From Isurus oxyrinchus (Eukaryota), in contig JANJGN010000034.1 in NCBI GenBank assembly GCA_026770705.1, forward strand, positions 15,748,001 to 15,812,000: 64,000 nucleotides of DNA, given 5' to 3'. Position 1 is the stretch's first letter; each line of letters starts with the position of its first letter. A model generated the notes under the pieces. The model was not told the DNA's origin and did not search any database. It saw nothing but the letters and a program-made list of their open reading frames with translations. Positions 2,765 through 58,236 of the stretch are shown piece by piece. Made by a program: the position numbers and the translations under genes.

Positions 2765-3240
2765 GGCTGGTGGGGTGGAAGGTGAGGACAAGGGGACTCC
2801 TAACGTGGTCTTCGGGGGTGGGGGGTCAGAGGGGTGAGAGCATAAGTGCAGGAAATGGGATGGGGGTCTTGTTAACCACATTGCTGGGGAATTGGTTAAG
2901 GAAAAAGATCAGTTCTACGATCAGAACAGATGTTACCAAGTGGGAGAAAATTGTGAGAAGTATCGTCGAGGTAGCTGTGGGATTGGGTGGGATTCTAGTG
3001 AATATTCTTTGACAGGAGATCCCCAGAAATTCAGTCATCATCATCAACGTAGCAGTAAAAGAGGTGGGGGATGGGGCCCAAGTAGGACTGGACCAAGGAA
3101 AGTTCCACATATCCTACTAAAAGGCCGGCAGAGCTAGTGTCCACGTGGGTGCTAATAGCTCACACCTTTGATGTAAAGTGAATGAGTGGAGGTAAAGGTG
3201 AGAACAAGTTCAGCCAGGTGGAGAAGGATGGAGGCAGGAG
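2765..3240 (-). mobile_element. Old decayed Penelope-like RT fragment (copies at ~28935-29550 and ~54895-55490)
   Basis: gtgaggacaagggg and gtgagaacaagttcagccag match the RT/thumb region of the young element at 22960-23610. Confidence 0.7.
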
Positions 3241-4740
3241 GAGAAACTGGCAGCCAAAGAGAATTTGTGTTTTTGGGGGCTGCAATGTAACTCCATTTAT
3301 ATTAAAAGAGAATTTTTCCTTAAAAGGTGTCTGCAATTCAGTTGTCTGGGCCCCAAGCTCTGGAAAACTGATCTCATTTTCATCCTCTGACCTAATGCCT
3401 CCAGATGTGGTTTGGTATCAAATTCTCTTTTATAATGCTCTGTGAAGCACCTTGGGACATTTAAAAAACACCTTTAACATTATAAAATACAACTTGTTCA
3501 TGACGAGATTCAGGAACAAGTCTGGACTCCTGTCATTATTCAGTTGCTATTGTGATGTGTGAATACTATTTCCAAGTTCCTGTATTTTCTCTCCGTGTCT
3601 GTATAAGGGTTTCCACCTGTGAAGAAGTTGAATCGCTCTGTTTGTTCATGCCAAAACCATTTCCACCCCAGGAAAGGTGAAGGGAGATCACACACTCCCT
3701 CCGTCCCAATCCCTTCCCTTCCCCTAATGCCCAATCACCAGAGGTGCTGACTGCATGATCACTCCTGGCCTCCGGAAGTTCCCACAATCACAGATACCAG
3801 TCTTCAGCCAATCTCATTCACTTCTCACATCGGGAGACTTACTGCCTGCAGACAGCATGACCTCTGTTCAGGCAGTGACTACCAGAGTCATTAAACATCA
3901 GACTGTAGATCCACTCATTTCAGCATCGGTCTATCTTTAATTAGACCTTGGATCAAAAATGACATGTAGAAAAGTAAGAAATATACCTGACAAATGTATA
4001 GACACATACAAAAATATTTAGATTAGAAATTTTAGACATCCTTTGTCAAATATGATCAATTACTGTTTGGAATAAAAGCTGCATTTAAAAAAGGCAAGAT
4101 TCAAATATACCAAATGTATCTGCATCATTTCTGGCAAGAAACAGTTTCAATCTGTAAACTATCTACAATCTGAATTCTGGCTGTAAAACACTTGCTGACA
4201 ATAATGTCGTTGCTGGCTTTTGCCCAGAGGGAGTTTCTGAAGCCTCTTCCCATGTTCAACACTGTGGAAGCAGCATCACTACAAGGGCTGCAGTGTTTAA
4301 AATTGAGACGGACAATAAACGGGACCCTGGCAGCATCACCCACACTGAGAACAAGTGAATAAACTCATCAGAAATTACCTGATGTTCCCACTCATTCATC
4401 AGTAGGAAGTTACCATCTCACACAGGGAGTGATCAATGGGTACACAGCTAAAGATGGTCCTGTACGTTCCTGAGACTAGGTTTAGACACAGGCTGTAACA
4501 GGAATGCAGACAGATAATGCAGAGAATGAAATACTTGGAGAGCTTTTCTAGTAAATGGAGAATACTTCCACTGGGAGATTCCCTCCTGAGATTGTGCTGG
4601 TCAGGACGGTTTGTGCAAAGTGGGAAGTGATTGTTGATCCCAATCCTGAGCTCAGACATTCCACCAGGAATCACTAGATAACCACAATACTGGCCTGATT
4701 TTCCCCTCCCTGACACATGCTCAGTGCAGGGGAAACTCAG

Positions 4741-4850
4741 CTAGTGCTGGACAGACCTGATCCCCTGAAGGTTTTCTTCTCCAGCCGCTCCATCCTGCTG
4801 CTCAGGTGCTGTTGTCACAAGGCCCCGTGCGTCACCCCAACAGGTCACCT
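4741..4850 (-). other. Possible terminal cytoplasmic exon of G2 (EVTCWGDARGLVTTAPEQQDGAAGEENLQGIRSVQH*); mirror starts at 53286
   Basis: gtcgcag acceptor with an open phase-1 frame and hydrophilic composition. Its link to upstream exons is unresolved. Confidence 0.3.
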
Positions 4851-5592
4851 CTGCGACAACGTAAGATGCTTCATTTTGATTGATATGGTGTCTACTTTGT
4901 TTCCCAGGAGAGAAAAACCAGCAGAGTTCAGGTGACATTAAAAGAATCCAACACTTTGGACAAGTGTGTAAAGGAGCCGTTCAGGAGCACAGACCAATTA
5001 AATTACACTCAACATCCTGGGTACCAATAGCAGCTGGAAAATGGGTCACAGGAGCCGCATGGTGATGGAGCACAGACTGTAGAGGAGAGGAGGCTCATAG
5101 GGGAAGCAATGGGCAAGAGGTGGACACTCCACAGGAGCTGTGCTGACCGACAGAGGAAGGGTCAGTGGATAGAGTTAGAAATCCTGCAATCGTCCCTCCT
5201 CCCACTGCGAGGGGTGTATGTGGGGACAGGCGGTGAACATGGAGATGTGGATATTGAGTGAAACAAGGGAATCCAAGATGGACTTCCCAGTGACTAAATC
5301 ATCAAATATCCGGGTTAAAGGGCGGTGATTTGAAAAGTGTAGGAGGAGACTGAACAGCAACAACTTGCATTTATATAGCCCAATTCCTTCACCGGCCTAT
5401 ATCTCTTTGCAGCCTCTTTGTATCCTCCTCAGTTTACTTTCCCATTGAGCTTTGTATCATCAGCAAAATTGGACATATTACACTCTATCCCCTCACCTAA
5501 GTCTTTGATCTAGATTGTGAATAACTGATGATTCAGCACCAGTTACATTGTGAGCTTTAATCTTGTGGAACAGCCTGTTGTGTGGCACCTGA

Positions 5593-6181
5593 TCAAATTC
5601 CTTCTGAAATTCCAAATATATTCCTCATCCACTCGCCGAGCACCAGTACCCGAGGCTGGAGCTCGCCGAGCACCAGTAGCCGAGGCTGGAGCTCGCCGAG
5701 CACCAGTAGCCGAGGCTGGAGCTCGCCGAGCACCAGTAGCCGAGGCTGGAGCTCGCCGAGCACCAGTAGCCGAGGCTGCAGCTCGCCGAGCACCAGTAGC
5801 CGAGGCTGGAGCTCGCCGAGCACCAGTAGCCAAGGCTGGAGCTCGCCGAGCACCAGGACCCGAGGCTGGAGCTCGCCGAGCACCAGTAGCCGAGGCTGGA
5901 GCTCGCCGAGCACCAGTACCCGAGGCTGGAGCTCGCCGAGCACCAGTACCCGAGGCTGGAGCTCGCCGAGCACCAGTACCCGAGTCTGGAGCTCGCCATG
6001 CACCAGTACCCGAGTCTGGAGCTCGCCGAGCTCCAGTACCCGAGTCCGCAGCTCGCCGGGCACCTGTACCCAAGTCCGCAGCTCTCTGGGCCCTCCTGCT
6101 GAAGCGATCGGATCCAACCTCCGCCCGGGACACAAAATCTCCAGGCAGTTTCCCCCTCCTCTCAAGATGCTAGCTAACTGA
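5593..6181 (-). CDS. G2 candidate cytoplasmic exon: QLASILRGGGNCLEILCPGRR...(LGELQPRLLV)n...[13 protein letters not shown]
   Basis: Acceptor tactgatctttttcacag|T. Only the phase-2 frame is open after it, and the TM exon ends in phase 2 (TG|). Part of ORF 5593-6372. Confidence 0.45.
5632..6085. repeat. 30-bp GC-rich minisatellite (gctcgccgagcaccagtagccgaggctgga), about 15 units
   Basis: Directly visible. Unit length is divisible by 3. Confidence 0.97.
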
Positions 6182-7312
6182 CTGTGAAAAAGATCAGTAA
6201 CCAGTGCCCTGTAGTTTTGGGTTGTGTCCAGGGATAGGCTGGGAGCCAAAACTGAATCACAGGGTCGCACTAACAGTAAATCTGCCACTGACAATGGAAT
6301 ATCCACAAGTGTCTGCTGTAGAGAATTCCAAACAGCCAGGCGGAAATAGCCTTTCAACATCAACCCTGTCAAGACAGAATATTATGTTTCATGGTGATCA
6401 TTCTCTTTTTGAACTTCAGAGAATGCAGATCCATTTTACTTATTCTCTCCTTGTCGGTCACCCCAGTGAACCCAGGATTGAGCCTACTGAACCTTTGTTA
6501 CACTCCCTTATCACTCCATCACTCCCTCAAGTCACACATAACCTGCCTAGGAGAAGCAGACCAAACTATACACAGTTCTCCCGGCTTTGGTCCAATCCAT
6601 GCCCCATATAAACTGCAGTGAATCTTCCTCACTCTTCTACTCCAAACACTTGCAATAAAGGCTAACCTCCTATTTACCTTCCAAATCATCCGCATGTTAA
6701 GTTGGTGATTTGTGTATAAATCACTCCAAATGTCTTTTACCGATGTCCTGCCTTGAAAATATATTCTACTTTTCCATTTTCCAAATGTTCACAATTTCAA
6801 CATTATACTCCATCTGCCTCCATTTTTGCCCAATTACTTCACCGGCCTATATCTCTTTGCAGCCTCTTTGTATCCTCCTCAGCTTACTTTCCCATTGAGC
6901 TTTGTATCATCAGCAAAATTGGACATATTACACTCTATCCCCTCACCTCAGTCATTGATCTAGACTGTGAATAACTGATGATTCAGCACCAGTTACATTG
7001 TGAGCCCTAATCTTGTGGAACAACCTGTTGTGTGGCACCTGATCAAATTCCTTCCGATATTCCAAATATATTGCTCATCCACTGGTTCCCCCAGAAGGAT
7101 AATATTTGTTCATTTTCAATCCATGGGGAATGTTCAGCAGCTACAGGATGACAAGCTGGAAGTGATTGGATAATGCTGCTCAATGATAGGGTGGATTGAA
7201 GCATCCTCACAGCTCAGTAAATGGACAGGTTTAGATGTCAGCAACATTTAAGAGAACATTATAAAACAAAAACAGGATTAAAATGGAAACAATGAAACAT
7301 TCTAGAACTCAC

Positions 7313-7442
7313 CATGTTTGTCGCCTTTGGAATACACAAACCGCAATTCCAGAAAGCAAAACTCCAGCAAAAAAACCAACAGCAACTCCAACTCCAATTC
7401 CAAATCCAAATCCAGGCCGTGCTCCTGTACAAAGTACAGGAC
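7313..7442 (-). CDS. G2 transmembrane exon (GPVLCTGARPGFGFGIGVGVAVGFFAGVLLSGIAVCVFQRRQT)
   Basis: tctctag|GT...ACA TG|gtgagt. Hydrophobic span followed by basic stop-transfer QRRQ. Phase 1 to 2. Confidence 0.85.
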
Positions 7443-8184
7443 CTAGAGACAGAATGAAGACATTAACAGACTGGGACACACTTACATAACTAACAGCAGA
7501 GATCATTAGCATCTAGTGTTTCAGAACCAGCCCCAGTACAAACAGATCCCTGGTTAATTCTAGTCCTGGTGGGATGTGGGAGGTTACATACCAATAATCA
7601 CACACACACCAGGCCACCTACAGCTCCGTGCACACAAACACTGTACCACAATGTGTCCAATACATGCTTTCCAATAGAGATAACTGGACACTGACCAGCA
7701 GCAGCCTCCCTTCAATTAAAGCTAACAACCTGCTGAAAGAGAGAAGGGGAATTTTAAAAAAATAATGTTTTTTGGCTGGGAATGCAATGAGGTTGGATGG
7801 GTTACCAGTTTGTACCCAGATCAATATGATTCTCCACTGAATTCAATGTTGACGATTCCCCGGGTCACTCCCTCCCGACTGTATATCACTGTGCCCACAC
7901 CTCTGTTGGGTCTGTCCTGCTGGTGGGACAGGACATGCCCAGGGATGGTGATAGAGGAGTCTGAGATGTAGGGCTGATTCTGAGAGTATGATTATGTCAC
8001 ACAGCTCTCCCAACTTGGACACAAGTCCCCAGATGTTAGTGAAGGAACATTGCAGAGTTGACTGGGCTGGGTGTGTCTTTGTTGTTTCCTGATTCGATAC
8101 CTGGGTCTCAACCAGTGATCCGTTCAGTTTCGTTCCGTTTTTTCTGTCTCACGGTTTGATACAACCTGAATGAAGTGGCCGAGT

Positions 8185-8490
8185 AAGTCAGAGGACAGTT
8201 AAAAGTCAACCAGGTTAATGTGGGACTGGAGTCACAGAGACCAGACTGGTTAAGGACGGCAGGTTTCCTTCACTAAAGGGACATTTGTGAACCAGTTGGG
8301 GTTTTACAATAATCCAACAGCTTCAGGGTCACTTTTATTGGGACCAGCTTGATATTTCCCAGATTTTAAATTTAAATTCAGTTAATTAATTAAAATGCCA
8401 TCGTGGGTCTGAATTCACATTGTGTGGGTGATTAGTCCAGGCCTCCGGATTTCTAGTCTAGTAACATAATCACTGCACTACCAAACCCAT
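8185..8490 (-). mobile_element. Shark tRNA-type SINE (paralogous copies at ~49745-50050, ~63440-63720, ~62195-62575, ~44950-45190, ~12760-12995)
   Basis: Shared motifs ttcaaatcccaccatggca, gtgaccctgaagctgttggattgttgtaaaaccc and gtgactccagtcccaca. Confidence 0.7.
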
Positions 8491-8535
8491 CACTCAGAGA
8501 TTAAATACAGGACACCTGAAACAGAAACTTCTCAC

Positions 8536-8807
8536 CTCTTACAGAGAGATGGATGTGATCAGTGTGCTCCCAGTGTAACCCTGCACCTGTTCTCTTGTAA
8601 ATCTGACATCGATCCTGGTTCTGGTCTGACTTCCTGAGGTCAGAGATTAGAACTGACCTGTTGCCTTATTCCAGTTGATCAGTGAACAGGTTTGTTCTGT
8701 TTCTGAACTGTGGGTCTTGTCCTGTCACTTCCCATTCCCATTGACAAATTTCACACTCAGATACCCCCCAGGCTACCAGTAAATCTGAGACTGGGACATT
8801 CCCTTTG
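8536..8807 (-). pseudogene. 5'-truncated second IgV pseudo-exon (V2) in the G2 intron
   Basis: Reverse strand encodes ...QDPQFRNRTNLFTDQLE*GNRSVLISDLRKSDQNQDRCQIY. In-frame TAA. About 600 bp including the exon start is deleted relative to arm B 48828-49428. Confidence 0.85.
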
Positions 8808-9150
8808 AAATCTGAAACAAAAATTGCTGCAAAAACTCAGCAGGTCTGACAGCATCTGTGGAGAGGAAGACAGAGTTAATGTTTTGAGTCTGTTGGACTC
8901 TACATCAGAACTAAAGGGGATCAGAAATGTGGTGAAATATAAGCTGTTTAAGGGGGGGTGGGACAGGTGGAGCTGGACAGAGGGCCAGTGATAAGTGGAG
9001 GCAATGGAGAGATTGCTAAAGATGTAATAAATAAAGGGACAAAGGGGTGTTGACGGCAGTGATATTAGCTAAAGGATGTGCTAATGGTGACATTAATGGT
9101 AGAAAGCAGGATAAGCAAGTGACAGATGGCCCTTCTGGGGTGGGGTGGGG
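8808..9150 (-). mobile_element. Old Penelope pLTR-derived element with degenerate hammerhead (mirror ~48490-48850)
   Basis: aaaactcagcaggtctg...aaatataagctg(t)ttaag, same layout as the young pLTRs. HHR-like stretch at 8874-8912. Confidence 0.7.
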
Positions 9151-9159
9151 TGAAGGGAT

Positions 9160-12100
9160 CCTAATATCCTCACCAGGACGTTTGGTCGTGCTGTTGGGGA
9201 AGGTTTAAACTTGATTGGCAGGGGGATGGGAACCTGGGGTGGGTAAATTCAGAGTGCAGAGGAGAAAAACTGGCAGTGGGAAGTAGAGAAATATCAACTC
9301 ATAATGAGGATATATCAGAGAGATGCATCAAGGTAGATAGGATATCTGGAGAGTTTGCTAGAATTAGAGTTGGCAACAGTAAGACATTAGGTGGGGTCAG
9401 GATAAGGGGGAAAAGAAAAAGCCGAAATAAGGGCTAATGTGCATGTATGTGAATGCACAGAGTGTGATTAATAAGACTGGTGAACCGCAGGCACAGGTTG
9501 ACAAGTGGAATTATGATATTATCGCTATAACAGAGACCTGGCTCAAAGAAGGGCAGGACAGGGCATTAAATATTCCTGGGTAAAAGGTGTTTAGGAGCGA
9601 CAGGAAAGGAAGAAACAGGAAAGGAGTGACAATATTGGTTAACGATAGCATTACAGTACTGGACAGAGAGGATGTTCCAGAGGAGTCAGGGATGGAATCT
9701 CTCTGCCTAGAGGTAAGGAATGGGAAAGGTGCAATAACATTGATTGGTGTGGTATATAGAGCACCAACTAGTGGAAGGGATGTGGAGAAACAAATTTGCA
9801 AAAGAAATTATGGAGACGTGCAAGAGTTATAGAGAATCATACGGGTACCTTCCATCCTCCAAATATAGACTGGGATAGGAATAGTACAAAACATAAGAGG
9901 GGCGAGAGTGTTCCTGGAACGTGTTCAAGATCATTTTCTACAGCAGTATGTTTCCATCCAACAAGAAGACCTGCACTTTTGGACCTGATTCTGGGAAATG
10001 TGTTGGCTCATGTGGATCAAATATCAGTGGGAGAGCATCTACAGGATAGTGACCATGTATCATAAGGTTTAGGTTAATCACGGAAAAGGACAGAGAACAA
10101 TCCACAGCAGAAATAATTAATTGGAGGAGAGCAAACTTTAATGGGATGAGAATGCATCTGAGTTGAGTGAGTTGGAATCAAGTGTTGGCAGAAAAGACAA
10201 TGGCTGAACAATGGGCTGCCTTCAAACAAAAAGTATTCCAGGCAATATCAAGATGTATTCCTTTGAAGGGGAAAGGTCGGACAAATAAATCCAGAGTGTC
10301 CTGGATGATGAGACAGATAGCAGTAAAGATGAAAAGGAAGAAGTGCACGTACGACAGACGTCAGGTAGAAAATACAATGGAGAATCAGACTGAATATAGA
10401 GGGACTAGAAAGGATGTGAAGGACTAAAAAGTAAAGCAAGGAGAGAGCATGAAAAGAGGCTGGCAGCAAACAAAAAAAGGTATCTTAAGGTCATCTATAA
10501 GCAGGTAAACAATAAAAGGATAGTAAAAGGAAGAGTAGGGCTGATTAGGGACAAAAAAAAAAGGAAGCTGCATGTGGAGGATGGGGAAATTGCGCAGGTG
10601 TTGAACGAGTACTTTAAATCTGTCTTTACAAAGAAAACTTGTTATCCAGGCCGAGGTGGGACAGTAGGTAACTGGAACACTTACAATTGAGAGGAAGGTG
10701 GTGTTGGAAAGTCTACCTTTACTTAAAATATCAGTACCAGAAGTGGATGAGATGCATCCAAGGGTACTGAGAGGAGTGAGAGTGGAAATTACAGAGGCAC
10801 TAGTAATACTATTCCAATCTTCCTTAGGCACAGGGGAGGAGAAATGCAAATGTTACACCCTTATCCAAAAGTGGGTGCAAGGATAAAGCTGACAACTACA
10901 GGCCAGTCAGTTTGACACCAATGGGAGGGAAACTTCTGAAAACTATAGTACGGGATGAAATCAATAATCACTTAGACAAGTGCAGGATAATTAGGGAAAG
11001 CCAGCATGGATTCATCAGGGGAAAATCATGTATAACTAACTTGACGGAATGTTTTGAGGAGGTAACAGAGAAGGTTGATAAGGGCAATGCTGTTGATGTG
11101 GTGTATATGGATTTTCAAAAGGCATGTGATACAGTGCCACACAATAGACTTGAGTGGAATGAAAGGGAAAGTAGGCACTTGGATAAGAAATTGGCTGAGT
11201 GATAGGAAACAGAGAATAGTGATAAATGGTTGTTTTTCAGATTGAAGGAAGATTTGTAGTGGAGTTCCTCAGGGGTCAGTGTTTGGACCCTTGCTCTTCC
11301 TGACATATATTAATGACCTAGACTGTGGTGTGCAGGGCATGATTTCAAAATTTAAAGATGGTACAAAGATTAGAAATGTTATCAACTGTGATGGGAATAA
11401 TCCTGAACTTCAAAAGGACATAGGCATGTTGGTGGATTGGGCAGACAAGTAGCAGATGAAGTTCAATGCAGAGAAGAGTGAGGTGATTCATTTTGGCAGG
11501 AAAGATATGGTGAGAGAGTATAAAATAAAGGGAGATCCTCTAAAGGAGGTGCAGGAACAGAGAGATATTGATGTATATGTACTTTGGTCATTGAAGATGA
11601 TTGGGCATGTCCAGAGTGCAATTAATAAAGCATATAGTATCTTAGGGATTATTAATAGGGGTATTGAGTACAAGAGTAAGGAGGTCATGTTAAACTTGTA
11701 TAAGACACTAGTTAGGCCTCATCTGGAGTACTGCGTCCAGTTCTGGGTGCCATACTTGAGGAAAGATGGGAAGGCATTGGAGAGAGTACAGAGGAGATTC
11801 ACAAGGATAATTCCTGGGATGAAGAACTGGAGCTATGAGGATAGATTAGAGGTTGGGACTGTTTTCCTTGGAGAAAAGAAGGCTGAGAGGAGACTTGATA
11901 GAGGAATTCGAGATCCTGAGGGGTAAAGACAGGGTAAATAGTGAGAAACTGTTCCCACTCAGGAGATCATCAAGAACTAGAGGGCACAGATACAAAATAA
12001 TTGGTAAAGGAGTAAATGTGATGTGGGGAAAGTCTTTTTCACCCAGAGGGTGGTTGGAGTCTGGAACAAACTTCCTGAAAGGGTGGTGGAGGCAGGATCG

Positions 12101-12260
12101 ATCGAGGTATTCTAAAGAGAATCAGATTGCTCCCTGAAAAGAGAGAATGTGCAAGGTTATGGGGATAAGGCAGTGGAGTGAGACTAGGCAGATTGCTCTT
12201 TCAGAGAGCCAGTGCAAACACAATGAGCCAAATGTCCTCTTTCTGCACTGTAAAGATACT
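9160..12260 (+). mobile_element. Decayed CR1-type LINE (end of ORF1, then APE endonuclease and RT of ORF2)
   Basis: Fragments YDIIAITETW, GVVYRAP, ESQHGFIRGKSCITNL, DVVYMDFQKA, LYKTLVRPHLEYCVQFW. Many stops and frameshifts. Confidence 0.93.
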
Positions 12261-13529
12261 GTGATATCTGTACAGGTACATTATCCTGTACTCCCCCCTC
12301 ACTTATTCTGTAAATCAGCTGCTGCTGCTGTCAATATTAACTATCAAAAGGAAATAGGATGAATTATTAAAGGGAAGGATAATTACAGGGAGAAAAAAAA
12401 TTTGAACAATTGATTTGGCCTTGCGACTGATAAAATCATTTCAGAAGCAGGGAGAGATCATTTGTCTCTGAGTGAATGAATTTAAAAGGGGACAAAGTGT
12501 CTCTTCCTCAAACCCATTTCTCGATCTTGTGATTAAAGTGATACAACCCCACCCTCTGCTGTCGGATGGACGCAACTACACAAGCAAAGGAGATCTCACC
12601 AAACATACAGTCAGAGAGCAGGTCAATCAAAAATGACAGGGAAAGAATAGTTCAATATCTTCAGAGGAAAGCTGTAATGTACAGGTCGGGTGAAGTAGAA
12701 ATGAAGTTCTATTTTTGATTGGAAAATCAGGGGAGAGTGCCAGCGCAGTACCCCCACGCCTGGAGTCACATCTCGACCAGACTGGGTAAGGTTGGCAGGT
12801 TTCCATCCCTAAAGAGACATCAATGAACCAATTGGGGTTTTACAACAATCCAACAGCTTCATGGTACTTTTATTGCAACTAACTTCAGATTTCCAGATTT
12901 TTATTTAATCAACTCAATTTAAATTCTTTAAGTGCTATGTTGGGATTTGAACTCTCATTCTCCGGAGTATTAGTGTGGTAAGAGAACCATAGCATGACCA
13001 AATCTTCCCCACATGGTACATTTGGTCACTTTACCGCACCTTTCCCCTCCTCCTCCAATACCGACCCTCCTACAGTGCAGCGCTCCCTCAGTACTAACCC
13101 TCTGACAGTACAAAACACTCGCTCAGTACTGAGCCTCGGACAATGCAGCACTCCCACAGTAGGGATGTGGTGTTTTCTGGGAACACTAGGATTTACACAC
13201 TGAGTATTTACGGAGTGGGAATTGGGACACTTAAACTGTGCCCTGTTTACTGAGTGGATCCAGGATCACATGGATTTACAGGACCAGTCGTGAATAGCAG
13301 CAGATTGTTGGAGGGGGAACCGCACAGACTCCAGCGTCTGAATGAGTGACTCCTGTTCCTGGGAACAAACTGAACACTGCAATGGGAAGGAAAGGGCTCA
13401 CTCACACAGACACATTCTATGGTGAAATATTACATAGCATTTCAAACATTCCAATGTAACTACCTGTATCTGCAGCATGATCAAATGTAAGAGCTGAAAA
13501 CACATGCAGTAGTTCAGAAACAGATTTAC

Positions 13530-13568
13530 CTGGTACAGGTGTACTTGGTACAGATGTGTATGACGTCG
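13530..13568 (-). CDS. G2 candidate stalk micro-exon ATSYTSVPSTPVP (can extend in frame to 13464)
   Basis: ttttctttacag|CG ACG...CCA G|gtaaat. 39 nt, phase 1 to 1, S/T/P-rich, located between V and TM. Confidence 0.65.
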
Positions 13569-14724
13569 CTGTAAAGAAAACAACATGTGTTTAATATTTT
13601 GTATGAAACCAACTGAAGAAATATTCAAACACTCTATCGGGCTTTAAGGAAACACATCCTGGGAAGAACGAGACTCGGGTCAAACTGATTGGGAAGGGTC
13701 AGGAACAGGGTTGGCAGAGTGAAAAATCCAAAAGGATTGTATTAACTGTGGTGGGTAGAATGGATGTTTCCCAGAGTTACCCTGAGCAGAATCATTCCCA
13801 GCAGCCTACATCCCCCTGTGGAGAGAATCTCCACAGGATCCTGGGTCTACTGGGATACACTTTCACACTAAGTGCACTGGGTCTTGTAAAGGTTGCCTGA
13901 GAGGTGCGATGGGCCCCACCTCCTGCACCCCAAAATCTGGAGACAAACGGAGCTCTATGCTGGAGAGTGAGTGCAGTTTGATAGCTCCATTAACTCTTTC
14001 CATCACACAGTTTGACAGCTCTGTCCTTCAAGGCTCCATCAGCTTGGTCAGTGATGGTATTACTGACCCACCCTCGGTGATGGACAGTGAAGTCCCAACT
14101 CAGTACATTCTGTGTCCTTGCCACCTCACTGCTTCCTCCAATTGGTGTTCAGCATGGGGGAGTACTGATTCATCAGCTGACGGAGGGCAGTTGGTGATAA
14201 TCAGCAGAAGGTTTCTCGGGTCCATGTTTCACCTGAAGCTGTGAGACTTCATGGGGATCAGAGTCAATGTTGAGGATTTTTGGGACCGCTCCCTCCGGAC
14301 TGTATACCACACCACTGGTGGGTCTGTCCTGCCAGTGGGACAGGACATACCCAGGGATGGTGACAGAGGAGACTGGGATTCAGGCTTAATTCTGTGAGTA
14401 TGACTCTGCCAGACAGCTCTCCCAACTTGGACACCAGTCCCCAGAGGTTAGTGAGGGGACTTTGCAATCTTGACTGGCCTGAGCTTGTCTGTGTTGTTTC
14501 CTGATTCGAGCTTGGGATGAAGCCAATGAGGATTCAGTTTTATTCTATTCTTTTTTTCCAATGGTTTAATATCAATTCATTTTCAACTGCCCTCTTACCT
14601 GCTAGGCCAGTTTAACCAACCAGGTTACTGTGGGACTGGAGTCACATAGAGACCAGATTGGGTAAAGGGACATTCGTGAACCAGCTGGGGTTTTACAACA
14701 ATCCAACAGCTTCAGGGTCACTTT

Positions 14725-17700
14725 AAGACCATAGGACATAGGAGCTATTCGGCCCATTGAGTCTGCTCTGCCATTCAATCATGGCTGATAAGTTTCTCAA
14801 CCCCATTCTCCCGCCTTCTCCCCGTAACCTTTGATCTCCTTACCAATCAAGAACCTATCTATCTTGGTCTTAAATACACTCAGTGACCTGGCCTCCACAG
14901 CCTTCTGTGGCAATGAATTCCATAGATTCACCACTCTCTGGCTAAAGATGTTTCTCCTCATCTCTCTTCTAAAAGGTCTTCCCTTTACTCTGAGGCTGTG
15001 CCCTCGGGTCCTAGTCTCTCCTACTAATGGAAACATCTTTCCCACGTCCATTCTATCCAGGCCTTTCAGTATTCTGTAAGTTTCAATCAGATCCCCCCTC
15101 ATCCTTCTAAACTCCATCGAGTATAGACCCAGAGTCCTCAAACGTTCCTCATATGTTAAGCCTTTCATTCCTGGGTTCGTTCTCGTGAACCTCCTCTGGA
15201 CCATCTCCAGGGCCAGAACATCCTTCCTGAGAAAAGGGGCTCAAAATTACTCACAATATTCTAAATGTGGTCTGACCAGAGCCTTATAAAGCCTCAGCAG
15301 CATATCCCTGCTTTTATATTCCAGTCCTCTCAAAATAAATGCCAACATTGCATTTGCTTTCCTAACTACCGACTCAACCTGCAAGTTAATCTTAAGAGAA
15401 TCTTGGACAGGGACTCCAAAGTCCCTTTGCACTCCAGATTTCTGAATTCTCTCCCCATTTAGAAAATAGTCTATGCCTCTATTCTTCCTACCAAAGTGCA
15501 TGACCTCACACTTCCCCACGTTGTATTCCATCTGCCACTTCTTTGCCCATTCTCCTAACCTGTCCAAATCCTCCTGCAGCCTCCCTGCCTCCTCAATACT
15601 ACCTGTCCCTCCACCTATCTTTGTGTCATCTGCAAACTTAGCCAGGATGCCCTCGGTTCCTTCATCTAGATCATTAATGTATAAAGTGAAAAGTTGTGGT
15701 CCCAACACTGACCCCTGCGGAACTCCACTAATCACCAACTGCCATCCTGAGAAGGACCCCCTTATCCCCACTCTCTGCCTCCTGCCAGACAGCCAATCTT
15801 CTATCCATGCTAGTACCTTGCCTCTAACACCTGGGCTCTTATCTTACTGAGCAGCCTCCTGTGCGGCACCTTGTCAAAGGCCTTCTGGAAGTTCAAGAAG
15901 ATAACATCCAATGGCTCTCCTTTGTCTAACCTACTCGTTACCACCTCAAAGAATTCTAACAGATTTGTCAGGCATGACTTCCCCTTGATGAAACCATTGC
16001 TGACTTTGCCATTTTTTACCACGCACTTCCAAGTATTCTGAAATCTCATCCTTAATGGACTCTAAAATCTTACCAACGACCGAGGTCAGGCTAAACGGCC
16101 TGTCATTTCCTGTCTTTTGCCTCACTCCCTTCTTAAACAGAGGGGTTACATTAGCGATTTTCCAGTCCTCTGGGACCCTCCCTGACTCCAGTGATTCCTA
16201 AAAGATCACCACTAATGCCTCCACTATCTCTTCAGCTATCTCCTTCAGAACTCTGGGGTGTAATCCATCTGCTTCCGGTGATTTATCCACCTTCAGACCT
16301 TTCAGTTTTCCTAGCACCTTCTCCTTGGTAATGGCCACCATACACACCTCTGCCCCCCCGACTCACTTGAACTTGGGGGATGTCACTCGTGTCTTCCACC
16401 ATGAAGACTGACACAAAGTACCCATTCAGTTCCTCCGCCATTTCTTTGTTCCCCACTACCACTTCTCCAGCGTCATTTTCCAGCAGCCCAAAGTCCACTT
16501 TTGCCTCTCTCTTACCCTTTATGTATATAAAAAATCTCTTGCTAACTTCTTTTATATTACTGGCTAGTTTACCCTCATATTTAATCTTTTCCCTCCTTAT
16601 TTCTTTTTTAGTTATCCTCTGTTGGTCTTTGTAGGCTTCCCAATTCCCTAGTTTCCCACTGCTCTTCACCGCATTGTATGCTTTCTCTTTAGCTTTTATG
16701 CTGTCCCTGACTTCCCTTGTCAGCCATGGTTGCCTTGTCCTCCTTTACTATGCTTCTTCTTCCTAGGGATGAATTTTTGCTGTGTCTCCCAGAAACTCCT
16801 GCCATTGCTGTTCCACTGTCTTTCCAGCTAGGCTCATCTCCCAGTCAATTCTGGCCAGCTCCTCCCTCATGCCTCTGTAGTTGCCTTTATTCAACTGTAA
16901 TACCGTTACATCTGATTCCAGCTTTGTCCTCTCAAATTGCAGGGTAAATTCTATCATATTATGGTCACTTCCTCCTAAGGGCTCCTTCACCTTAAGCTCC
17001 CTTATCAAATCTGCCTCATTACACATCACTAAATCTGGAATTGCCTATTCCCTAGTGGGCTCCACCACAAGCTGCTCCAAAAAGCCATCTCGTAGACATT
17101 CTACAAATTCCTTTTCTTGGGATCCACTACTAACCTGATTTTTCCAGTCTACCTGCGTATTGAAATCCCCCATGATCACTGTAACCATGCCTTTCTTACA
17201 CGCCTTTACTAACTCCTGGTGTATCTTGTCCCCCACATCCTGATTACTGTTCGGAGGCCTGTACATAACTCCCATTATGGTTTTTTTACCTTTGCGGTTC
17301 CTCAACTCTACCCATACAGATTCTGCATCATCTGACCCTACGTCATTTCTTGCTATCGATTCAATTTCATTTCTTACTAACAAAGCAAACCCACCCCCTC
17401 TGCCAACCTGCCTATCTTTTCAATAGGATGCATATCCTTGGATATTTCGCTCCCAGTCCTGATCCGCTTGCAGCCATGTCTCCGTGATGCCCACCCTATC
17501 ATACCTGCCAATTTCAATCCACGCCACAAGCTCATTTACCTTATTTTGTATAATGCGTACATTCAGATACAACACCTTCAGTCCTGCATTTCCCATCCCC
17601 TTTCTCATTGTCGTCCCTTTATTTGATGTGCTTGAAGTTAGATTCCTAGCCCTTTCCAAACACTCTGTCCTATTTTGTGTTCTGGGGACTTTAATAGCCT

Positions 17701-17985
17701 CTCCTGGGCTCTCCTTTTTTTTCAGTTTTTTCATAATTTTCCATGAAGTTGAATCCACACCACCACCGCCCCCCCTCACCACTAACCTGCTGCTTTGTTT
17801 CCCGTTAGTCATACTTCTTGGTGTTTTACCCTCCCCACCCTCCACTTTCTAGTTTAAACTTCTGTTGACCACCCTATTTACCCTTTTCGCTAGAATACTG
17901 GTCCCAGATCAGATCAGGTGGAGACCGTCCCAATGGTACAGATCTCTCCTGTTCCACTACTGATGCCAGTGCCCCACGAAATGGT
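14725..17985 (-). mobile_element. CR1-type LINE, 5'-truncated, inserted into a SINE
   Basis: SGVPQGSVLGPQLFTLYINDL, KFADDTK, GITETW, MGDFN motifs. 3' tail gctcctatgtcctatggtctta. Confidence 0.95.
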
Positions 17986-18171
17986 TTATTGGAACTAACT
18001 TTATATTTCAAGGTTTGTATTTAATAAACAATTTAAATTCTGGTAGTGCCATGGTGGGATTTGAACTCTCATCTTCTGGATTATTAGTCCAGGCCTCTGC
18101 ATTTCTAGTCTAGTAACTGAACTACCAAACCCGTACAGAGATTAAATACAGAATACCTGAATACCTCTCAC

Positions 18172-18516
18172 CTGTCACAGAAAGATGGATGATATCAGTT
18201 TGCTCCCATTTATAACCCACAGCTATCCTTTTGTAAATGTGACACTGATACTGGTTCTGGTCTGACTCCCTGAGGTCAGAGATCAGAACTGACCAGTTGC
18301 CTTGTTCCAGTTGATCTTTGAACAGGTTTGTTCTGTTTCTGAATCGTGGGTCTTGTTCTGTCAAATCGTCGTTCCCAACGATGAACTTGTGTAAATTTTC
18401 ACTCTTGGCTGTATCCCAGATTACCAGTAAATTAGAGACTGGGGCAGTCCCTTTGGAGGTACAGGGCAGCACAACCTGCTCCCCAAAGAATCCAGAAACT
18501 GGGACAGGCGAGTCAC
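18172..18516 (-). CDS. G2 IgV exon, B7/butyrophilin-type V-set domain (open frame)
   Basis: ttttccag|GT GAC...ACA G|gtgag, 345 nt, phase 1 to 1. LPC...IW...EQDPRFRNRTNLFKDQLEQGNWSVLISDLRESDQNQYQC matches the CD276/VTCN1/BTN/MOG V-set signature. Confidence 0.92.
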
Positions 18517-19473
18517 CTGGAAAAGATTGAAAGTATTTATCCACAGATATAACCTCCCTGCTGGTACATCACATCCCAAGCTTCACATGGTTACACTGTG
18601 GTGCTTGATTTGCAATAAGCACTGATTAGTAACTCACTGCTTTCATTTCTGTGGGACGGTTAAAGCTAAGGCATTAAGGGCCTTCAACTAAATCCACATG
18701 TGCTGGATATTTGTAAGCACAGAGCAGCTGGACAGCACTTTGAATAACGTATCTCATTCATACACATGCTGGGAGAACAGATCAGGATATTGGTCACCTC
18801 CCCTTGGGAGAAAAATCACAGACTGGGGTTGCACAATACGAGGTGGAGCTCAGGAACAGAAATCTGACCCTGAAACGTAAAGACAGGAATGGGTGGGGGA
18901 AGGGGGTACCCAGGAAGCTGGAAAGGGTTTTGGATTGGTTGGGGAACAGTGACGGACGAATGCACCGTGTAGGGGGTGATGCAGAACCTGATTGTCTGAA
19001 AGGGGCTGTGGCAATATGGATCCTCACCTCCCTCCACCACGAACATGTCAGGCCTTGCTCCTCCCCCAATACGGCCAGACTCTGCCCCCTCCCAGGACCC
19101 AAAGCCCAGTTCCCAGTCCTGAAGTCCCTACTCCAAATCAATTCGCAGCTCCAACCAATCCCCAGCTCTAGTTGATCCCAGGAATGTCCCAGACTCCTGA
19201 TCCCAGTGCTCAGGGTACCATCCCAGGCCCACTGGATACCAGTCACCCATTGCAGTATCACCGAGTGATGCTCAGTGTCCCACAGTTCACATCACATGGA
19301 TTAATCTAAACACATTAACTGCCTCCCGTCCAGCTCTCAGGATCATGATGTGTGATGTGAACCTAATGTGTCCACTCCCTCAATGGCTCCACTTGCAGTA
19401 CACACAGCTCCTTAAAGCAAGATGAATTCCTGATTCCCCCACCCTTTGATCACTGAAATGTTCCAGCAATCAT

Positions 19474-19528
19474 CTGAAACAGCAGCTGCAACATTGAGCA
19501 GCAGCAGTAGTTTCTGTAAGTTGTGTCT
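19474..19528 (-). pseudogene. G2 leader exon with lost splice donor (RHNLQKLLLLLNVAAAVS)
   Basis: Acceptor ttgtag is present. After TCAG the sequence reads atgattgc instead of gtaagtgctgtgactgc. No phase-1 GT occurs before the in-frame TAA. Confidence 0.7.
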
Positions 19529-19656
19529 CTACAACAGGAAAACACAGTTAGCCCCTTTACAACAGATTCACTTCCTCATCTGATTGAGGAGGGGCCTGGG
19601 CCGAGTTAAGCGCCTGCGTGGGTTTATGACCCGCCCCTTGAAGATGGACAGGGGAC

Positions 19657-19707
19657 GCGCATGCGCCTCGGAACTGGAGAAAGGGCCCGGGAGAGGAGCA
19701 TGCGCAC
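19657..19707. promoter_or_regulatory. Two NRF1-like GCGCATGCGC motifs in a CpG-rich stretch (mirror 38000-38050; related motif ~58152)
   Basis: gcgcatgcgc at 19657-19666 and gcatgcgcac at 19698-19707. Confidence 0.5.
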
Positions 19708-19865
19708 TGAGGCCGAGTTAAACAGTTTTCTCCCTCCCGATCTTAGTTCCATTTTTTAATGTTTATCGCGGATCAGTTCAGTTTGCTTTTTCCCCACATT
19801 TCACCCGCATCCAACATCCAACCCCCACCCCCCCACCCCACCCACCCCACCCCAACACCCGGTAC

Positions 19866-19883
19866 CCGCAGCTCCTTTCCCAT
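19866..19883 (-). CDS. G2 candidate first micro-exon MGKELR
   Basis: ATG GGA AAG GAG CTG CGG|gtaccg, paralogous to the MEKELQ exon. The donor is weak. Confidence 0.4.
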
Positions 19884-20054
19884 CCATTCGGGTCCACACC
19901 GGGATCAGGGAGAGACCAGTGGGGGGAGATCCCGGTTGATTTTCTGGGTGTGATATAGAAATTCACCCGGGGGGCGGGGGGGTTCTCGCTCTTACCGACT
20001 CCGCTCCGGTAACGTTAAACACAGAAAGTGAAACAAAACAGCGCAGTAAATCCT

Positions 20055-22359: not shown

Positions 22360-23589
22360 TCACGACCTAAAGTTGTTGAATTCAATATTCAGACCGGAAG
22401 GCTGTAAGGTGCCTAGTCGGAAGATGAGGTGTTGTTCCTCCAGTTTGCGTTGGGCTTCACTGGAACAATGCAGTAAGCCAAGGACAGACATGTGGGCAAG
22501 AGAGCAGGGTGGAGTGTTAAAATGGCAAGCGACAGGGAGGTTTGGGTCATTCTTGCGGACAGACCGCAGGTGTTCTGCAAAGCGGTCGCCCAGTTTACGT
22601 TTGGTCTCTCCAATGTAGAGGAGACCACATTGGGAGCAACGAATGCAGTAGACTAAGTTGGGGGAAATGCAAGTGAAATGCTGCTTCACTTGAAAGGAGT
22701 GTTTGGGCCCTTGGACGGTGAGGAGAGAGGAAGTGAAGGGGCAGGTGTTACATCTTTTGCGTGGGCATGGGGTGGTGCCATAGGAGGGGGTTGAGGAGTA
22801 GGGGGTGATGGAGGAGTGGACCAGGGTGTCCCGGAGGGAGCGATCCCTACGGAATGCCGATAAGGGGGGTGAAGGAAAGATGTGTTTGGTGGTGGCATCA
22901 TGCTGGAGTTGGCGGAAATGGCGGAGGATGATCCTTTGAATGCGGAGGCTGGTGGGGTGATAAGTGAGGACAAGGGGGACCCTATCATGTTTCTGGGAGG
23001 GAGGAGAAGGCGTGAGGGCGGATGCGCGGGAGATGGGCCGGACACGGTTGAGGGCCCTGTCAACGACCGTGGGTGGAAAACCTCGGTTAAGGAAGAAGGA
23101 GGACATGTCAGAGGAACCGTTTTTGAAGGTAGCATCATCGGAACAGATGCGACGAAGGCGAAGGAACTGGGAGAATGGGATGGAGTCCTTACAGGAAGCG
23201 GGGTGTGAGGAGCTGTAGTCGAGGTAGCTGTGGGAGTCGGTGGGTTTGTAATGGGTATTGGTGGACAGTCTATCACCAGAGATAGAGACAGAGAGGTCAA
23301 GGAAGGGAAGGGAAGTGTCAGAGATGGACCACGTGAAAATGATGGAGGGGTGGAGATTGGAAGCAAAATTAATAAATTTTTCCAAGTCCCGACGAGAGCA
23401 TGAAGCGGCACCGAAGTAATCATCGATGTACCGGAGAAAAAGTTGTGGAAGGGGGCCGGGGTAGGACTGCAACAAGGAATGTTCCACATATCCCATAAAG
23501 AGACAGGCATAGCTGGGGCCCATGCGGGTACCCAGAGCCACACCTTTTATTTGGAGAAAGTGAGAGGAGTTGAAGGAGAAATTGTTCAA
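22360..23589 (-). CDS. Penelope-like RT plus GIY-YIG endonuclease (partial; upstream TAA at ~23641-23643)
   Basis: 409-aa ORF with YIDD catalytic motif and GIY-YIG core. Confidence 0.9.
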   Translation of the reverse strand: MNNFSFNSSHFLQIKGVALGTRMGPSYACLFMGYVEHSLLQSYPGPLPQLFLRYIDDYFGAASCSRRDLEKFINFASNLHPSIIFTWSISDTSLPFLDLSVSISGDRLSTNTHYKPTDSHSYLDYSSSHPASCKDSIPFSQFLRLRRICSDDATFKNGSSDMSSFFLNRGFPPTVVDRALNRVRPISRASALTPSPPSQKHDRVPLVLTYHPTSLRIQRIILRHFRQLQHDATTKHIFPSPPLSAFRRDRSLRDTLVHSSITPYSSTPSYGTTPCPRKRCNTCPFTSSLLTVQGPKHSFQVKQHFTCISPNLVYCIRCSQCGLLYIGETKRKLGDRFAEHLRSVRKNDPNLPVACHFNTPPCSLAHMSVLGLLHCSSEAQRKLEEQHLIFRLGTLQPSGLNIEFNNFRS

Positions 23590-24620: not shown

Positions 24621-25289
24621 TCCCAAGCAGAGCTCTAGGTTACCAGGAAAGATGCAATATAAACACAGGTCTGTCTTTAATGTTGGAATCATCTTGGAAG
24701 TGATGGGAGAAAATTGAAACTGGAACTTACCTGTCTGAGATATGTTGAACTGCTGGTTGGGGTACTCTCCTCGTGTCGCTATGATTGGAAACATGTTTTA
24801 CTGTCTGTGCGGCCTCAACACACACGACTTTCAATGACTTCCACACTTAAGGATAAACTGGACCTTCCTCATTGTTGTGATTGAGTTTACTGCAGTACCC
24901 AGCACACATTGATCAATCCATTTAGTTGCTGTTGGTCTTGGTTCAGTGTACGAGGCACAATGAACATCCTCATGGCTGTGGCATTTTAACCAGGTACTTT
25001 TTAATACAATCCCAACTTGTTGCCTCTACCCTGGTGAGCAGAGGTGAGAATTCCAGTCTCTTTGATATTGGGTTGACATCCAGCAGGGAACTGGAAGTCA
25101 ACCCACTGCCCATTGTATCCACCCAGACCCTCCTGGTAGCTCATTGTTAGTCAGCATAAGGACGTGTTCAGATAAAAAGAGTCTTGCTTATGGAGCACAA
25201 TCCACTGGAGGTAAAAGCAGGGGAAGGAATCAGTTGTTTCATCTTTACAATGATATATTAATTTTTGAGACGTGAGTGTCTTTGACGAA

Positions 25290-39428: not shown

Positions 39429-39773
39429 GTGACTCGCCTGTCCCAGTTTCTGGATTCTTTGGGGAGCAGGTTGTGCTGCCCTGTACCTCCAAAGGGACTA
39501 CCCCAGTCTCTGATTTACTGGTTATCTGGGATACAGCCAAGAGTGAAAATTTACACAAGTTCATCGTTGGGCACGACGATTTGACAGAACAAGACCCATG
39601 ATTCAGAAACAGAACAAACCTGTTCAAAGATCAACTGGAACAAGGCAACTGGTCAGTTCTGATCTCTGACCTCAGGGAGTCAGACCAGAACCAGTATCAG
39701 TGTCACATTTACAAAAGGATAGCTGTGGGTTATAAATGGGAGCAAACTGATATCATCCATCTTTCTGTGACAG
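39429..39773 (+). pseudogene. G3 IgV exon with a premature stop
   Basis: Mirror of 18172-18516, with CGA>TGA at 39599-39601 (EQDP*). Confidence 0.9.
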
Positions 39774-58126: not shown

Positions 58127-58236
58127 GTAAAAAGGGGTGGGGATCAAACCCACGCATGCGCTTCGCCCGACCCAGCCCAGTCATCAACCAGAAGTGAATC
58201 TGTTGTAAAGGGTGTAACTGTGGTTTCTTGTTGCAG

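What the first reader, a model, noticed from the sequence alone, without database searches (positions are those of the whole stretch)
5593..19883. B7/butyrophilin-type receptor with single V, stalk, TM and repeat tail, and no IgC (BG-like layout)
Seen: a phase-consistent chain of micro-exon (phase 0), leader (0-1), IgV (1-1), S/T/P stalk (1-1), TM (1-2) and tail (2). No IgC or B30.2 ORF appears in the ORF track or by eye. Known: B7 and BTN proteins are usually V-C, whereas chicken BG proteins are single-V, disulfide-linked dimers with a repetitive cytoplasmic tail encoded by a rapidly changing gene cluster. Inference: a lineage-specific, possibly undescribed chondrichthyan family with an analogous design.
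Basis: partly seen in the sequence, partly recalled or inferred. Interest (0 to 1): 0.8.

Follow-up and report, generated by a model that had tools for sequence, protein, structure and literature searches.

The report
Decaying shark B7-like V-only gene
This is a damaged, probably dead copy of a small shark-only membrane protein gene family with B7-type immunoglobulin V domains and no C domain, and the supposed repeat tail is an intronic minisatellite rather than coding sequence.

Summary
The exon chain is real up to the transmembrane (TM) exon. They match predicted proteins of 12 shark species.

Three points of the reading fail or need correction.
- **Tail.** The "repeat tail" is a 30-bp minisatellite, stop-free in five of six frames. 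Its frame is broken in the mirror copy, and 0 of 75 relatives have a tandem repeat. The conserved, non-repetitive family tail lies outside the interval at 4894-4741.
- **Second V exon.** A dead second V exon (8806-8536) lies between stalk and TM. The ancestral layout is therefore V-stalk-V-TM-tail, as in two-V relatives.
- **Integrity.** This copy has lost its leader splice donor. The mirror copy carries a stop in its V exon. The locus is probably a transcribed pseudogene.

No IgC or B30.2 is present, in the window or in the relatives. The V domain is B7-type, closest to CD276, B7-H4 and PD-L1.

The family is known only from automated gene models; four searches found no paper on it. The scan had already noted this cluster on the neighbouring window. 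Contigs show stalk spliced to TM, and TM spliced to a next gene's leader.

The chicken BG analogy is not supported. Interest is modest.

The parts
19866..19883 (-). Micro-exon with the start codon (MGKELR, phase 0, donor GT at 19865-19864).
   Evidence: Sequence. It is homologous to the first 6-7 residues of the shark models (MDGKELQ in P0002). The same kind of micro-exon lies upstream of the other leader copies.
19474..19528 (-). Leader (signal peptide) exon, phase 0-1. Its GTAAGT donor is missing: a 9-bp deletion relative to three other copies in the window.
   Evidence: Alignment A1. tblastn of P0002 residues 9-25 gives 94% identity. Read by eye, no in-frame phase-1 GT donor occurs before the next stop.
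18172..18516 (-). IgV exon V1: 345 nt, phase 1-1, open reading frame, B7-type.
   Evidence: It is 83% identical to Carcharodon P0002. It is about 96% identical over the V exon (my count from the alignment) to the first V of Carcharodon P0034; the whole reported match is 90.5% over 126 columns.
14797..17848 (-). LINE insertion (endonuclease and reverse transcriptase ORFs) in the V1-stalk intron.
   Evidence: Pfam RVT_1 4.5e-12 and Exo_endo_phos_2 5e-05; RVT_1 again.
13530..13568 (-). P/T-rich stalk mini-exon: 39 nt, phase 1-1, identical in both arms.
   Evidence: It corresponds to the ERxPTPxPNTPVP segment of the relatives. Its last 10 bases are joined to the TM exon in contigs of runs X1 and X7.
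9276..12137 (+). Second LINE-like insertion, opposite strand, in the stalk-V2 intron. A deletion next to it removed the 5' half of V2 in this arm.
   Evidence: ORFs with reverse-transcriptase-like motifs. Self-comparison shows about 600 bp present only in arm 2, at 48827-49428.
8536..8806 (-). Dead second V exon (psiV2). It has an in-frame TAA, a 4-codon gap, and is cut at 8807 in this arm. The arm-2 copy (49366-49701) is full length but its acceptor AG is changed to TG and it carries the same stop.
   Evidence: tblastn; sequences.
7313..7442 (-). Glycine-rich transmembrane exon, phase 1-2.
   Evidence: It is 79% identical to P0002 residues 154-191. Contigs lie on it in all four runs laid.
5632..6071 (.). 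I class it as intronic and non-coding.
Evidence: TRF. The unit is stop-free in five of six frames, and long ORFs run through the array on both strands. A 254-bp direct repeat brackets it at 5380-5633 and 6830-7083.
4741..4894 (-). Conserved family tail exon (CDS part), ending in a stop where the relatives end. The acceptor AG at 4896-4895 is inferred.
   Evidence: tblastn gives 72% identity to P0025 residues 169-215 and 53% to the P0002 tail. Sequence; comparison with 17 family tails.
24729..24794 (-). Upstream exon, 22 of 22 residues identical to the first exon of the Carcharodon model P0034, which splices it straight to a V1-like exon. It is not hydrophobic by eye.
39429..39773 (+). Mirror copy of the V1 exon in arm 2, with a TGA stop at 39599-39601 (CGA to TGA).
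   Evidence: It differs at 5 of 345 bases from arm 1: 4 amino-acid changing (one of them the stop) and 1 silent.

Best explanation
The interval holds one copy of a shark-restricted multigene family of small type-I membrane proteins.

**Family plan.**
- Start micro-exon.
- Signal-peptide exon.
- One or two B7-type IgV exons.
- An optional 13-residue P/T stalk mini-exon.
- A glycine-rich TM exon.
- A short conserved cytoplasmic tail without tyrosine motifs.
- No IgC and no B30.2.

**This copy.** It follows the two-V plan (V1, stalk, V2, TM, tail), but V2 is dead, so any mRNA would be single-V by exon skipping. The true tail exon is at 4894-4741. The 30-bp minisatellite at 5632-6071 is intronic.

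**State of the locus.** It lies in a 94-98% identical inverted duplication, and both arms carry separate lesions.
- Arm 1 has lost the leader splice donor.
- Arm 2 has a stop codon in V1.
- The locus is therefore most likely a transcribed pseudogene inside an otherwise active cluster.

**Inferred, not shown.** Intact family members probably act as cell-surface ligands or counter-receptors through the variable C' and FG face of the V domain. They probably oligomerise through the glycine-zipper TM.
For: **Exons and phases.**

**Family.**
- Their precomputed Pfam hits are V-type Ig families only (63 of 74) or none (11 of 74).
- Two-V members with the order V-stalk-V-TM-tail are P0037, P0038, P0040 and P0041.
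- V-core motif counts across 75 proteins are 48 with one, 10 with two and 17 with none.

**Tail.** The window's tail exon aligns to the family tail and stops at the same place.

**V type.**

**Lesions.**
-.
- The arms differ at 5 of 345 V-exon bases, 4 of them non-synonymous. That is close to the roughly 2% divergence of the flanking intron.
- The Carcharodon model P0034 of the orthologous or near-paralogous unit uses an upstream first exon that is not hydrophobic by eye. It also reads the stalk and TM out of frame.

**RNA-like contigs.**
- X1 and X7 join the stalk's end to the TM exon.
- X5 joins the TM donor to a leader exon.
Against: - No contig joining the TM donor to the conserved tail exon was listed. 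That junction and its acceptor rest on homology only.
- The runs are only guessed to be RNA. They are contigs, and they may come from paralogues at 92% or higher identity.
- V1 in arm 1 is still an open, well-conserved exon, so a recent or incomplete loss of function cannot be told from an assembly error in the 9-bp deletion.
- Contigs built from 31-letter words cannot cross a 30-bp tandem repeat, so the lack of coverage on the minisatellite is weak evidence.
Confidence: 0.7

Rival explanations
1. One reading: a working single-V receptor whose cytoplasmic tail is the decapeptide repeat encoded by the minisatellite, analogous to chicken BG.
For: A pyrimidine-rich acceptor near 6181 is compatible with phase 2. 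An ORF of 259 aa runs through the repeats in arm 1.
Against: - The repeat unit is stop-free in five of six frames, and long ORFs cross the array on both strands.
- Arm 2 has a stop after about 1.5 repeats in that frame, a different repeat consensus and a different copy number.
- 0 of 75 family proteins contain a tandem 8-12 residue repeat.
- Contigs of 3 of the 4 runs cross the proposed acceptor unspliced. None of the 9 listed joints enters 5593-6190 from the TM donor.
Confidence: 0.04
2. The arm-1 copy is still a working single-V gene. It makes a protein of V1, stalk, TM and the conserved tail, using a leader splice that I did not recognise, or the 9-bp deletion is an assembly error.
For: - The V1, stalk, TM and tail exons are all open with good splice sites.
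- Stalk-to-TM junction contigs exist.
- The dead V2 has lost its acceptor, so it would be skipped cleanly.
Against: - The leader donor is absent, and no in-frame GT donor follows.
- The mirror copy has a stop.
- The V exon differs between the arms at about the intron rate, mostly by amino-acid changes.
- The Carcharodon counterpart model is also aberrant.
Confidence: 0.2
3. The chain is a fusion of two former neighbour genes. The micro-exon, leader, V1 and stalk come from one gene, and V2, TM and tail from the next. On this view the TM and tail never belonged to V1, and the two-V layout is secondary.
For: - Tandem genes of this family are co-transcribed and cross-spliced: the TM-to-leader junction in X5, and the Carcharodon models P0033 and P0034.
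- Homology of V2 and its downstream flank with the V3 unit starts only about 130 bp upstream of the V exon.
Against: Two-V proteins with exactly the order V-stalk-V-TM-tail are predicted in Heterodontus, Rhincodon, Scyliorhinus torazame and Chiloscyllium. That fits an inherited two-V gene. No remnants of a TM, tail or leader were found between the stalk and V2.
Confidence: 0.2

Closest known systems
Predicted shark proteins of the same family (RefSeq automated models), for example Carcharodon carcharias LOC121271087 (P0002) and LOC121271031 (P0034, P0035), and Scyliorhinus canicula "sodium channel subunit beta-4-like" and "CD276 antigen homolog" models
   Same: - The same exon plan and the same conserved tail.
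- V identity of 60-96%.
- The first exon of P0034 is 22 of 22 identical to window 24794-24729.
   Different: - This copy has a dead second V exon and a lost leader donor.
- It has two LINE insertions.
- A juxtamembrane Cys replaces the Ser seen in most relatives.
- Its tail lacks about 5 residues at its start compared with lamnid relatives.
B7 family IgV domains (CD276/B7-H3, VTCN1/B7-H4, CD274/PD-L1)
   Same: V-domain sequence and fold: E 1.5e-13 to 2e-09 by sequence, Foldseek E about 1e-10, TM-score 0.73-0.79 and 25-28% identity.
   Different: There is no IgC domain. There are one or two V domains, a family-specific tail, and a tandem multigene cluster restricted to sharks.
Chicken BG (B-G) antigens
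   Same: IgV-only ectodomain of the B7/BTN type, a single TM, and a multigene cluster. The BG features are recalled, not taken from a call.
   Different: BG tails are long heptad-repeat coiled coils encoded by many small exons (recalled). Here the tail is about 50 residues, non-repetitive and conserved. The apparent repeat is a minisatellite.
Bony-fish multi-V "butyrophilin-like 2 / CD276 homolog / hemicentin-like" predicted proteins (gar, lungfish, eel, teleosts)
   Same: They are the best non-shark matches, with arrays of B7-like V domains. Each has 2-11 matched V stretches.
   Different: Identity is only 25-36%. They are much longer, at 365-1936 aa. The shark tail was not seen in them.
Myelin-oligodendrocyte glycoprotein (MOG)
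   Same: A single B7/BTN-type IgV and no IgC. E 8.8e-09 to MOG in the PDB. Several shark models are named MOG-like.
   Different: MOG has a second hydrophobic segment after the TM (recalled). None is present in this tail. It is not a one-to-one orthologue, because the sharks carry many paralogues.

Membership tests
Shark V-only B7-like family (RefSeq models P0001-P0075) | B7-type IgV exon in phase 1-1, at least 55% identical to family members | tested here: met
   59-83% identity to 32 family proteins. By my count, about 96% identity over the V exon to the first V of P0034.
Shark V-only B7-like family (RefSeq models P0001-P0075) | Start micro-exon, a leader rich in Leu, the P/T stalk mini-exon and a Gly-rich TM | tested here: met
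   All were mapped by tblastn and read in the DNA with splice sites. The leader donor is missing in this copy.
Shark V-only B7-like family (RefSeq models P0001-P0075) | Conserved cytoplasmic tail (NQNEAS ... TTAPEHQDG ... VQH-stop) | tested here: met
   Present at 4894-4741 with a stop at the family's C-terminus. The full tail motif is found in 25 of 75 family proteins under a strict pattern.
B7 family (CD80/86, PD-L1, B7-H3, B7-H4) | B7-type IgV domain | tested here: met
B7 family (CD80/86, PD-L1, B7-H3, B7-H4) | Membrane-proximal IgC domain | tested here: not met
   No C-set hit in 37 of 37 gene-strand open segments. None among the precomputed Pfam hits of 74 relatives.
Butyrophilins | Cytoplasmic B30.2 (PRY/SPRY) domain | tested here: not met
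   No SPRY/PRY hit in the same scans. The relatives end in the short tail.
Chicken BG | Long repetitive (heptad) cytoplasmic tail | tested here: not met
   The repeat is a minisatellite that is not conserved between the arms. 0 of 75 relatives have a tandem-repeat tail.
Chicken BG | Disulfide-linked dimer; location in the MHC | not testable with these tools
   A juxtamembrane Cys exists in this copy only. No MHC marker gene was seen in the window's ORF lists.
MOG | Second hydrophobic membrane-associated segment after the TM; single-copy orthologue | tested here: not met
   The tail is hydrophilic. Many paralogues exist per shark genome.

The most novel reading that the evidence does not exclude
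The family's exon phases (leader 0-1, V 1-1, stalk 1-1) and its tight tandem arrangement may let read-through transcripts splice across gene borders. A cluster of single-V genes could then also yield V-V and V-stalk-V proteins. That would be a germline, splice-based way of combining B7-like V domains in sharks.

The evidence so far is a TM-donor-to-leader junction in run X5 and the Carcharodon models P0033 and P0034, which string exons of neighbouring units.
Probability: 0.12. Interest if true: 0.6.

Novelty: new variant of a known kind. Interest (0 to 1): 0.3.

Why it matters
The family shows that sharks carry an expanded, lineage-restricted branch of the B7 superfamily. It dispenses with the IgC domain and has its own conserved tail. 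I found no paper on it, and automated annotation scatters it under at least six unrelated names. A proper description would clean up shark immune-gene annotation and add to the history of co-stimulatory ligands.

For this particular locus the lessons are cautionary. A stop-free minisatellite can pass for a phase-consistent exon. A neat exon chain can also hide a dead exon and a lost splice site.

Tried and rejected
**Leads that gave nothing or were dropped**
Rejected for the reasons given under the rival explanations.
- **IgC or B30.2 hidden in the introns.** Rejected after Pfam scans of every gene-strand open segment of 70 aa or more and a Cys-Trp-Cys pattern scan.
- **One-to-one orthology with CD276, VTCN1 or MOG.** Rejected.
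  - Identity to solved B7 structures is only 25-28%.
  - Each shark genome holds many paralogues.
  - A separate Heterodontus model named CD276 antigen-like (435 aa, 34% identity) also exists.
- **Tail function.** Pfam on full-length P0002 and P0037 gave nothing for the tail. The protein atlas search on the tail gave no usable hit.
- **Literature.**
  - Four searches found no description of the family.
  - I read only passages found by term search in PMC12841164, PMC12151841, PMC10751288 and PMC11599192. None mentions these genes.
  - Supplements were not opened and could hold gene lists that include them.
- **Synteny with the MHC.** Not testable in this window.
- **Phylogenetic tree.** I built none, because the 53% versus 37% identity gap already separates the family.
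- **Batoid and chimaera absence.**
  - This rests on 30 names looked up among the best 150 representatives.
  - Those 30 include 16 of the 17 non-family proteins with E at or below 1e-30 (P0092 was not looked up).
  - It also rests on the word-based searches.
  - No genome-level tblastn was possible.

Full report
**Setting**

The window has no N runs. It is a large inverted duplication: arm 1 (about 1-26800) mirrors arm 2 (58353 down to about 31889) at 94-98% identity. The arms differ by LINE-associated indels, including about 600 bp present only in arm 2 at 48827-49428. The centre holds Penelope-like elements with GIY-YIG ORFs and several satellites.

**The exon chain**

The window contains five V-like exons:
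- V1 in arm 1 (18516-18172), open.
- V1 in arm 2, with a TGA stop.
- A second V (psiV2) in each arm, with an in-frame TAA.
- A third, intact V at 63059-63385.

V1 hits Pfam V-set (E 2.3e-09). Used alone as a query, the V1 ORF found 32 proteins, all from sharks, of 111-245 aa. Each has V-set as its only Pfam family or none at all. Their sequences show a fixed plan:
- about 7 residues containing the start;
- a leucine-rich signal peptide;
- the V domain;
- an optional ERxPTPxPNTPVP stalk;
- a glycine-rich TM;
- a tail with NQNEAS, then TTAPEHQDG, ending VQH.

Laying those proteins on the window by tblastn and reading the DNA gives these exons in arm 1.

| Exon | Coordinates | Notes |
|---|---|---|
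| Micro-exon | 19883-19866 | Starts at the second ATG, phase 0 |
| Leader | 19528-19474 | Phase 0-1 |
| V1 | 18516-18172 | Phase 1-1 |
| Stalk | 13568-13530 | 39 nt, phase 1-1 |
| TM | 7442-7313 | Phase 1-2 |
| Tail | 4894-4741 | Phase 2, ends in a stop |

Exons were handled one at a time.

**The tail**

- The unit is stop-free in five of six frames, and long ORFs run through the array on both strands. An ORF there carries no weight.
- In arm 2 the array has 12.4 copies and a different consensus.
- A 254-bp direct repeat carrying a reverse-transcriptase-like fragment brackets it, at 5380-5633 and 6830-7083 (95.7% identical).
- None of the 75 family proteins I hold has a tandem repeat of 8-12 residues.
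It is 72% identical to Scyliorhinus P0025 residues 169-215 and ends in a stop where the relatives end.
- The acceptor I assign (AG at 4896-4895) is the first AG after a long pyrimidine run. It keeps the frame but drops about five residues that lamnid relatives have. This acceptor is inferred, not shown.

**A missed second V exon**

Between the stalk and the TM lies psiV2 (8806-8536).
- It has a TAA stop and a 4-codon gap.
- In arm 1 its 5' half is deleted next to a LINE.
- In arm 2 it is full length, but its acceptor AG has become TG.

A search with the whole Carcharodon protein P0002 found 74 proteins. Several are longer two-V members. P0037, P0038, P0040 and P0041 read leader-V-stalk-V-TM-tail, which is exactly the order in the window. 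P0033 and P0039 read V-V-TM. By a V-core motif, 10 of the 75 proteins I hold have two V domains. The locus therefore follows the two-V plan and is single-V only because the second exon has died.

**No IgC, no B30.2**

- Pfam scans of all 37 gene-strand stop-free segments of 70 aa or more in 3000-20000 gave one Ig hit (V1) and LINE domains only.
- A Cys-Trp-Cys pattern scan found only V1 and V3 as Ig-like.
- The precomputed Pfam families of the 74 relatives are V-type Ig families (63) or none (11). None is a C-set or SPRY family.

**What kind of V**

- By sequence, the best solved relatives are CD276 (1.5e-13), B7-H4 (2.3e-12), PD-L1 (about 2e-09) and MOG (8.8e-09).
- An AlphaFold model of the V1 exon, built with 29 further family sequences in the alignment, has mean pLDDT 89.6.
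- Its best structural matches are PD-L1 and B7-H4 IgV domains (E about 1e-10, TM-score 0.73-0.79, 25-28% identity).
- Across 67 distinct family V domains the framework is nearly invariant. Variation is concentrated in the C' region and the FG loop.

**Range of the family**

A full HMMER scan of 1.84 billion representatives with P0002 gave 28 proteins at E 1e-30 or better.
- Eleven of them are the shark family, at 55-75% identity.
- The other 17 are 25-36% identical multi-V proteins.
- I looked up 16 of those 17, and all are from bony fishes: teleosts, gar and lungfish.
- Ten further look-ups among weaker hits gave seven teleost proteins, one frog HHLA2, one Heterodontus model named CD276 antigen-like (34% identity) and one Rhincodon family fragment.
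- No skate, ray or chimaera protein appeared. This is suggestive only.

Four literature searches and term-searched passages of four papers found no description of the family.

**Is this copy alive?**

- In arm 1 the leader's GTAAGT donor is missing. A 9-bp deletion removes it relative to the arm-2, V3 and window-edge copies. By eye, no in-frame GT donor follows before the next stop.
- In arm 2, V1 has a CGA-to-TGA stop.
- The two V1 exons differ at 5 of 345 bases, of which 4 change the protein. That is about the intron's rate.
- The Carcharodon model P0034 begins with an exon that is 22 of 22 identical to window 24794-24729 and, by eye, is not hydrophobic. It continues into a V about 96% identical to V1 over the exon (my count). 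It then reads the stalk and TM out of frame and runs on into the leader and V of the next unit, which is about 92% identical to the window's V3. This mirrors the arm-2 layout.
- All of this fits a transcribed but decaying copy.

**Reads**

The runs found are coded, kept as contigs, and only guessed to be RNA. I laid 3400-9000 on X1, X4, X5 and X7. The tool warns that contig depth cannot rank the parts of a gene, so I rely on where the contigs lie.
- *Stalk to TM.* X1 and X7 each have a contig on the TM exon whose loose end beyond 7444 is the reverse complement of CCTGTACC. With the shared AG, that is the last ten bases of the stalk exon. The junction skips psiV2.
- *TM to a leader.* X5 has two contigs whose loose end before 7312 is, when reverse-complemented, the start of a leader exon. 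It matches the arm-1 leader at 29 of 30 bases. The TM donor is therefore spliced to a next gene's leader, as in P0034.
- *Listed joints.* None of the nine joints links 7313 to the minisatellite region, and none links it to the conserved tail either.

Caveats:
- 282 loose ends were not shown.
- Contigs at 92% identity or more can come from paralogues. The high-depth tail contigs differ from the window by 5-8%.
- Contigs built from 31-letter words cannot traverse a 30-bp repeat.

**Mechanism**

Shown:
- the exon plan;
- the V type;
- the absence of IgC and B30.2;
- the lesions;
- the two junctions above.

Inferred:
- Intact members are type-I glycoproteins. NRT and NWS sequons are conserved.
- They probably present one or two B7-like V domains on a short stalk that is likely O-glycosylated.
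- They probably associate through a glycine-zipper TM.
- The tail has no ITIM or ITAM-like tyrosine motif, and the TM has no charged residue. They therefore look more like ligands or counter-receptors than like signalling receptors.

**Earlier scan notes**

- A follow-up on the next window (s1-869589) reached the same view: a shark-only B7-like single-V cluster in a lamniform shark.
- A first-reader note (s1-870009) proposed the minisatellite as a recruited tail exon, which my results contradict.
- Another first-reader note (s1-868833) places a complete gene just before this window. I saw its leader at 123-58.

**Verdict**

The BG-like repeat tail is wrong, and this particular copy is probably dead. 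The family itself is a real and apparently unpublished V-only branch of the B7 superfamily in sharks. It is already present in automated annotation and was already noted by this scan.

Noticed in passing
window 7312 (TM donor), run X5: Two contigs join the TM exon's donor exactly to the first base of a leader exon of this family. This is intergenic splicing between tandem units, matching the chimeric Carcharodon model P0034.
   Followed up: partly
window 26463-26443 (-) and 32246-32266 (+): Two mirror-image start micro-exons (MDGKELQ followed by GT) lie in the centre of the palindrome. No leader exon is nearby. They may be orphans or alternative first exons.
   Followed up: no
window 63059-63385 (+), leader 58231-58296: A third, intact V exon has its own micro-exon and a leader with an intact GTAAGT donor. 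The gene runs off the window's end. It is about 92% identical to the second V of the Carcharodon models P0033 and P0034.
   Followed up: partly
window 1-26800 versus 58353-31889: A large inverted duplication at 94-98% identity, with a centre rich in Penelope-like elements (GIY-YIG ORFs at 22360-23589 minus and 35596-36723 plus) and 61-bp, 43-bp and 33-bp satellites.
   Followed up: partly
window 8624 to 7444, run X7: One contig (depth 114, shorter side 22 letters) joins the middle of the dead V2 exon to the TM acceptor, with no GT at the upstream side. I could not tell whether it comes from a paralogue, a cryptic splice or an assembly jump.
   Followed up: no
window 53393-53395 (+) versus 4743-4741 (-): The tail's stop codon (TAG in arm 1) reads GAA in arm 2, which extends the ORF by over 100 codons. 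Two Cetorhinus models (P0045, P0070) have a similar extension after VQH.
   Followed up: no
window 4174-4580, runs X4 and X5: High-depth contigs skip 405 bases of the presumed 3'UTR (ends TT..AT, so not a splice). This is probably an indel between paralogous 3'UTRs.
   Followed up: no
window 7430-7428 (-): A juxtamembrane Cys (GPVLCTG) occurs in both arms where most relatives have Ser (GPGLSTG). It is a possible interchain disulfide specific to this copy.
   Followed up: no
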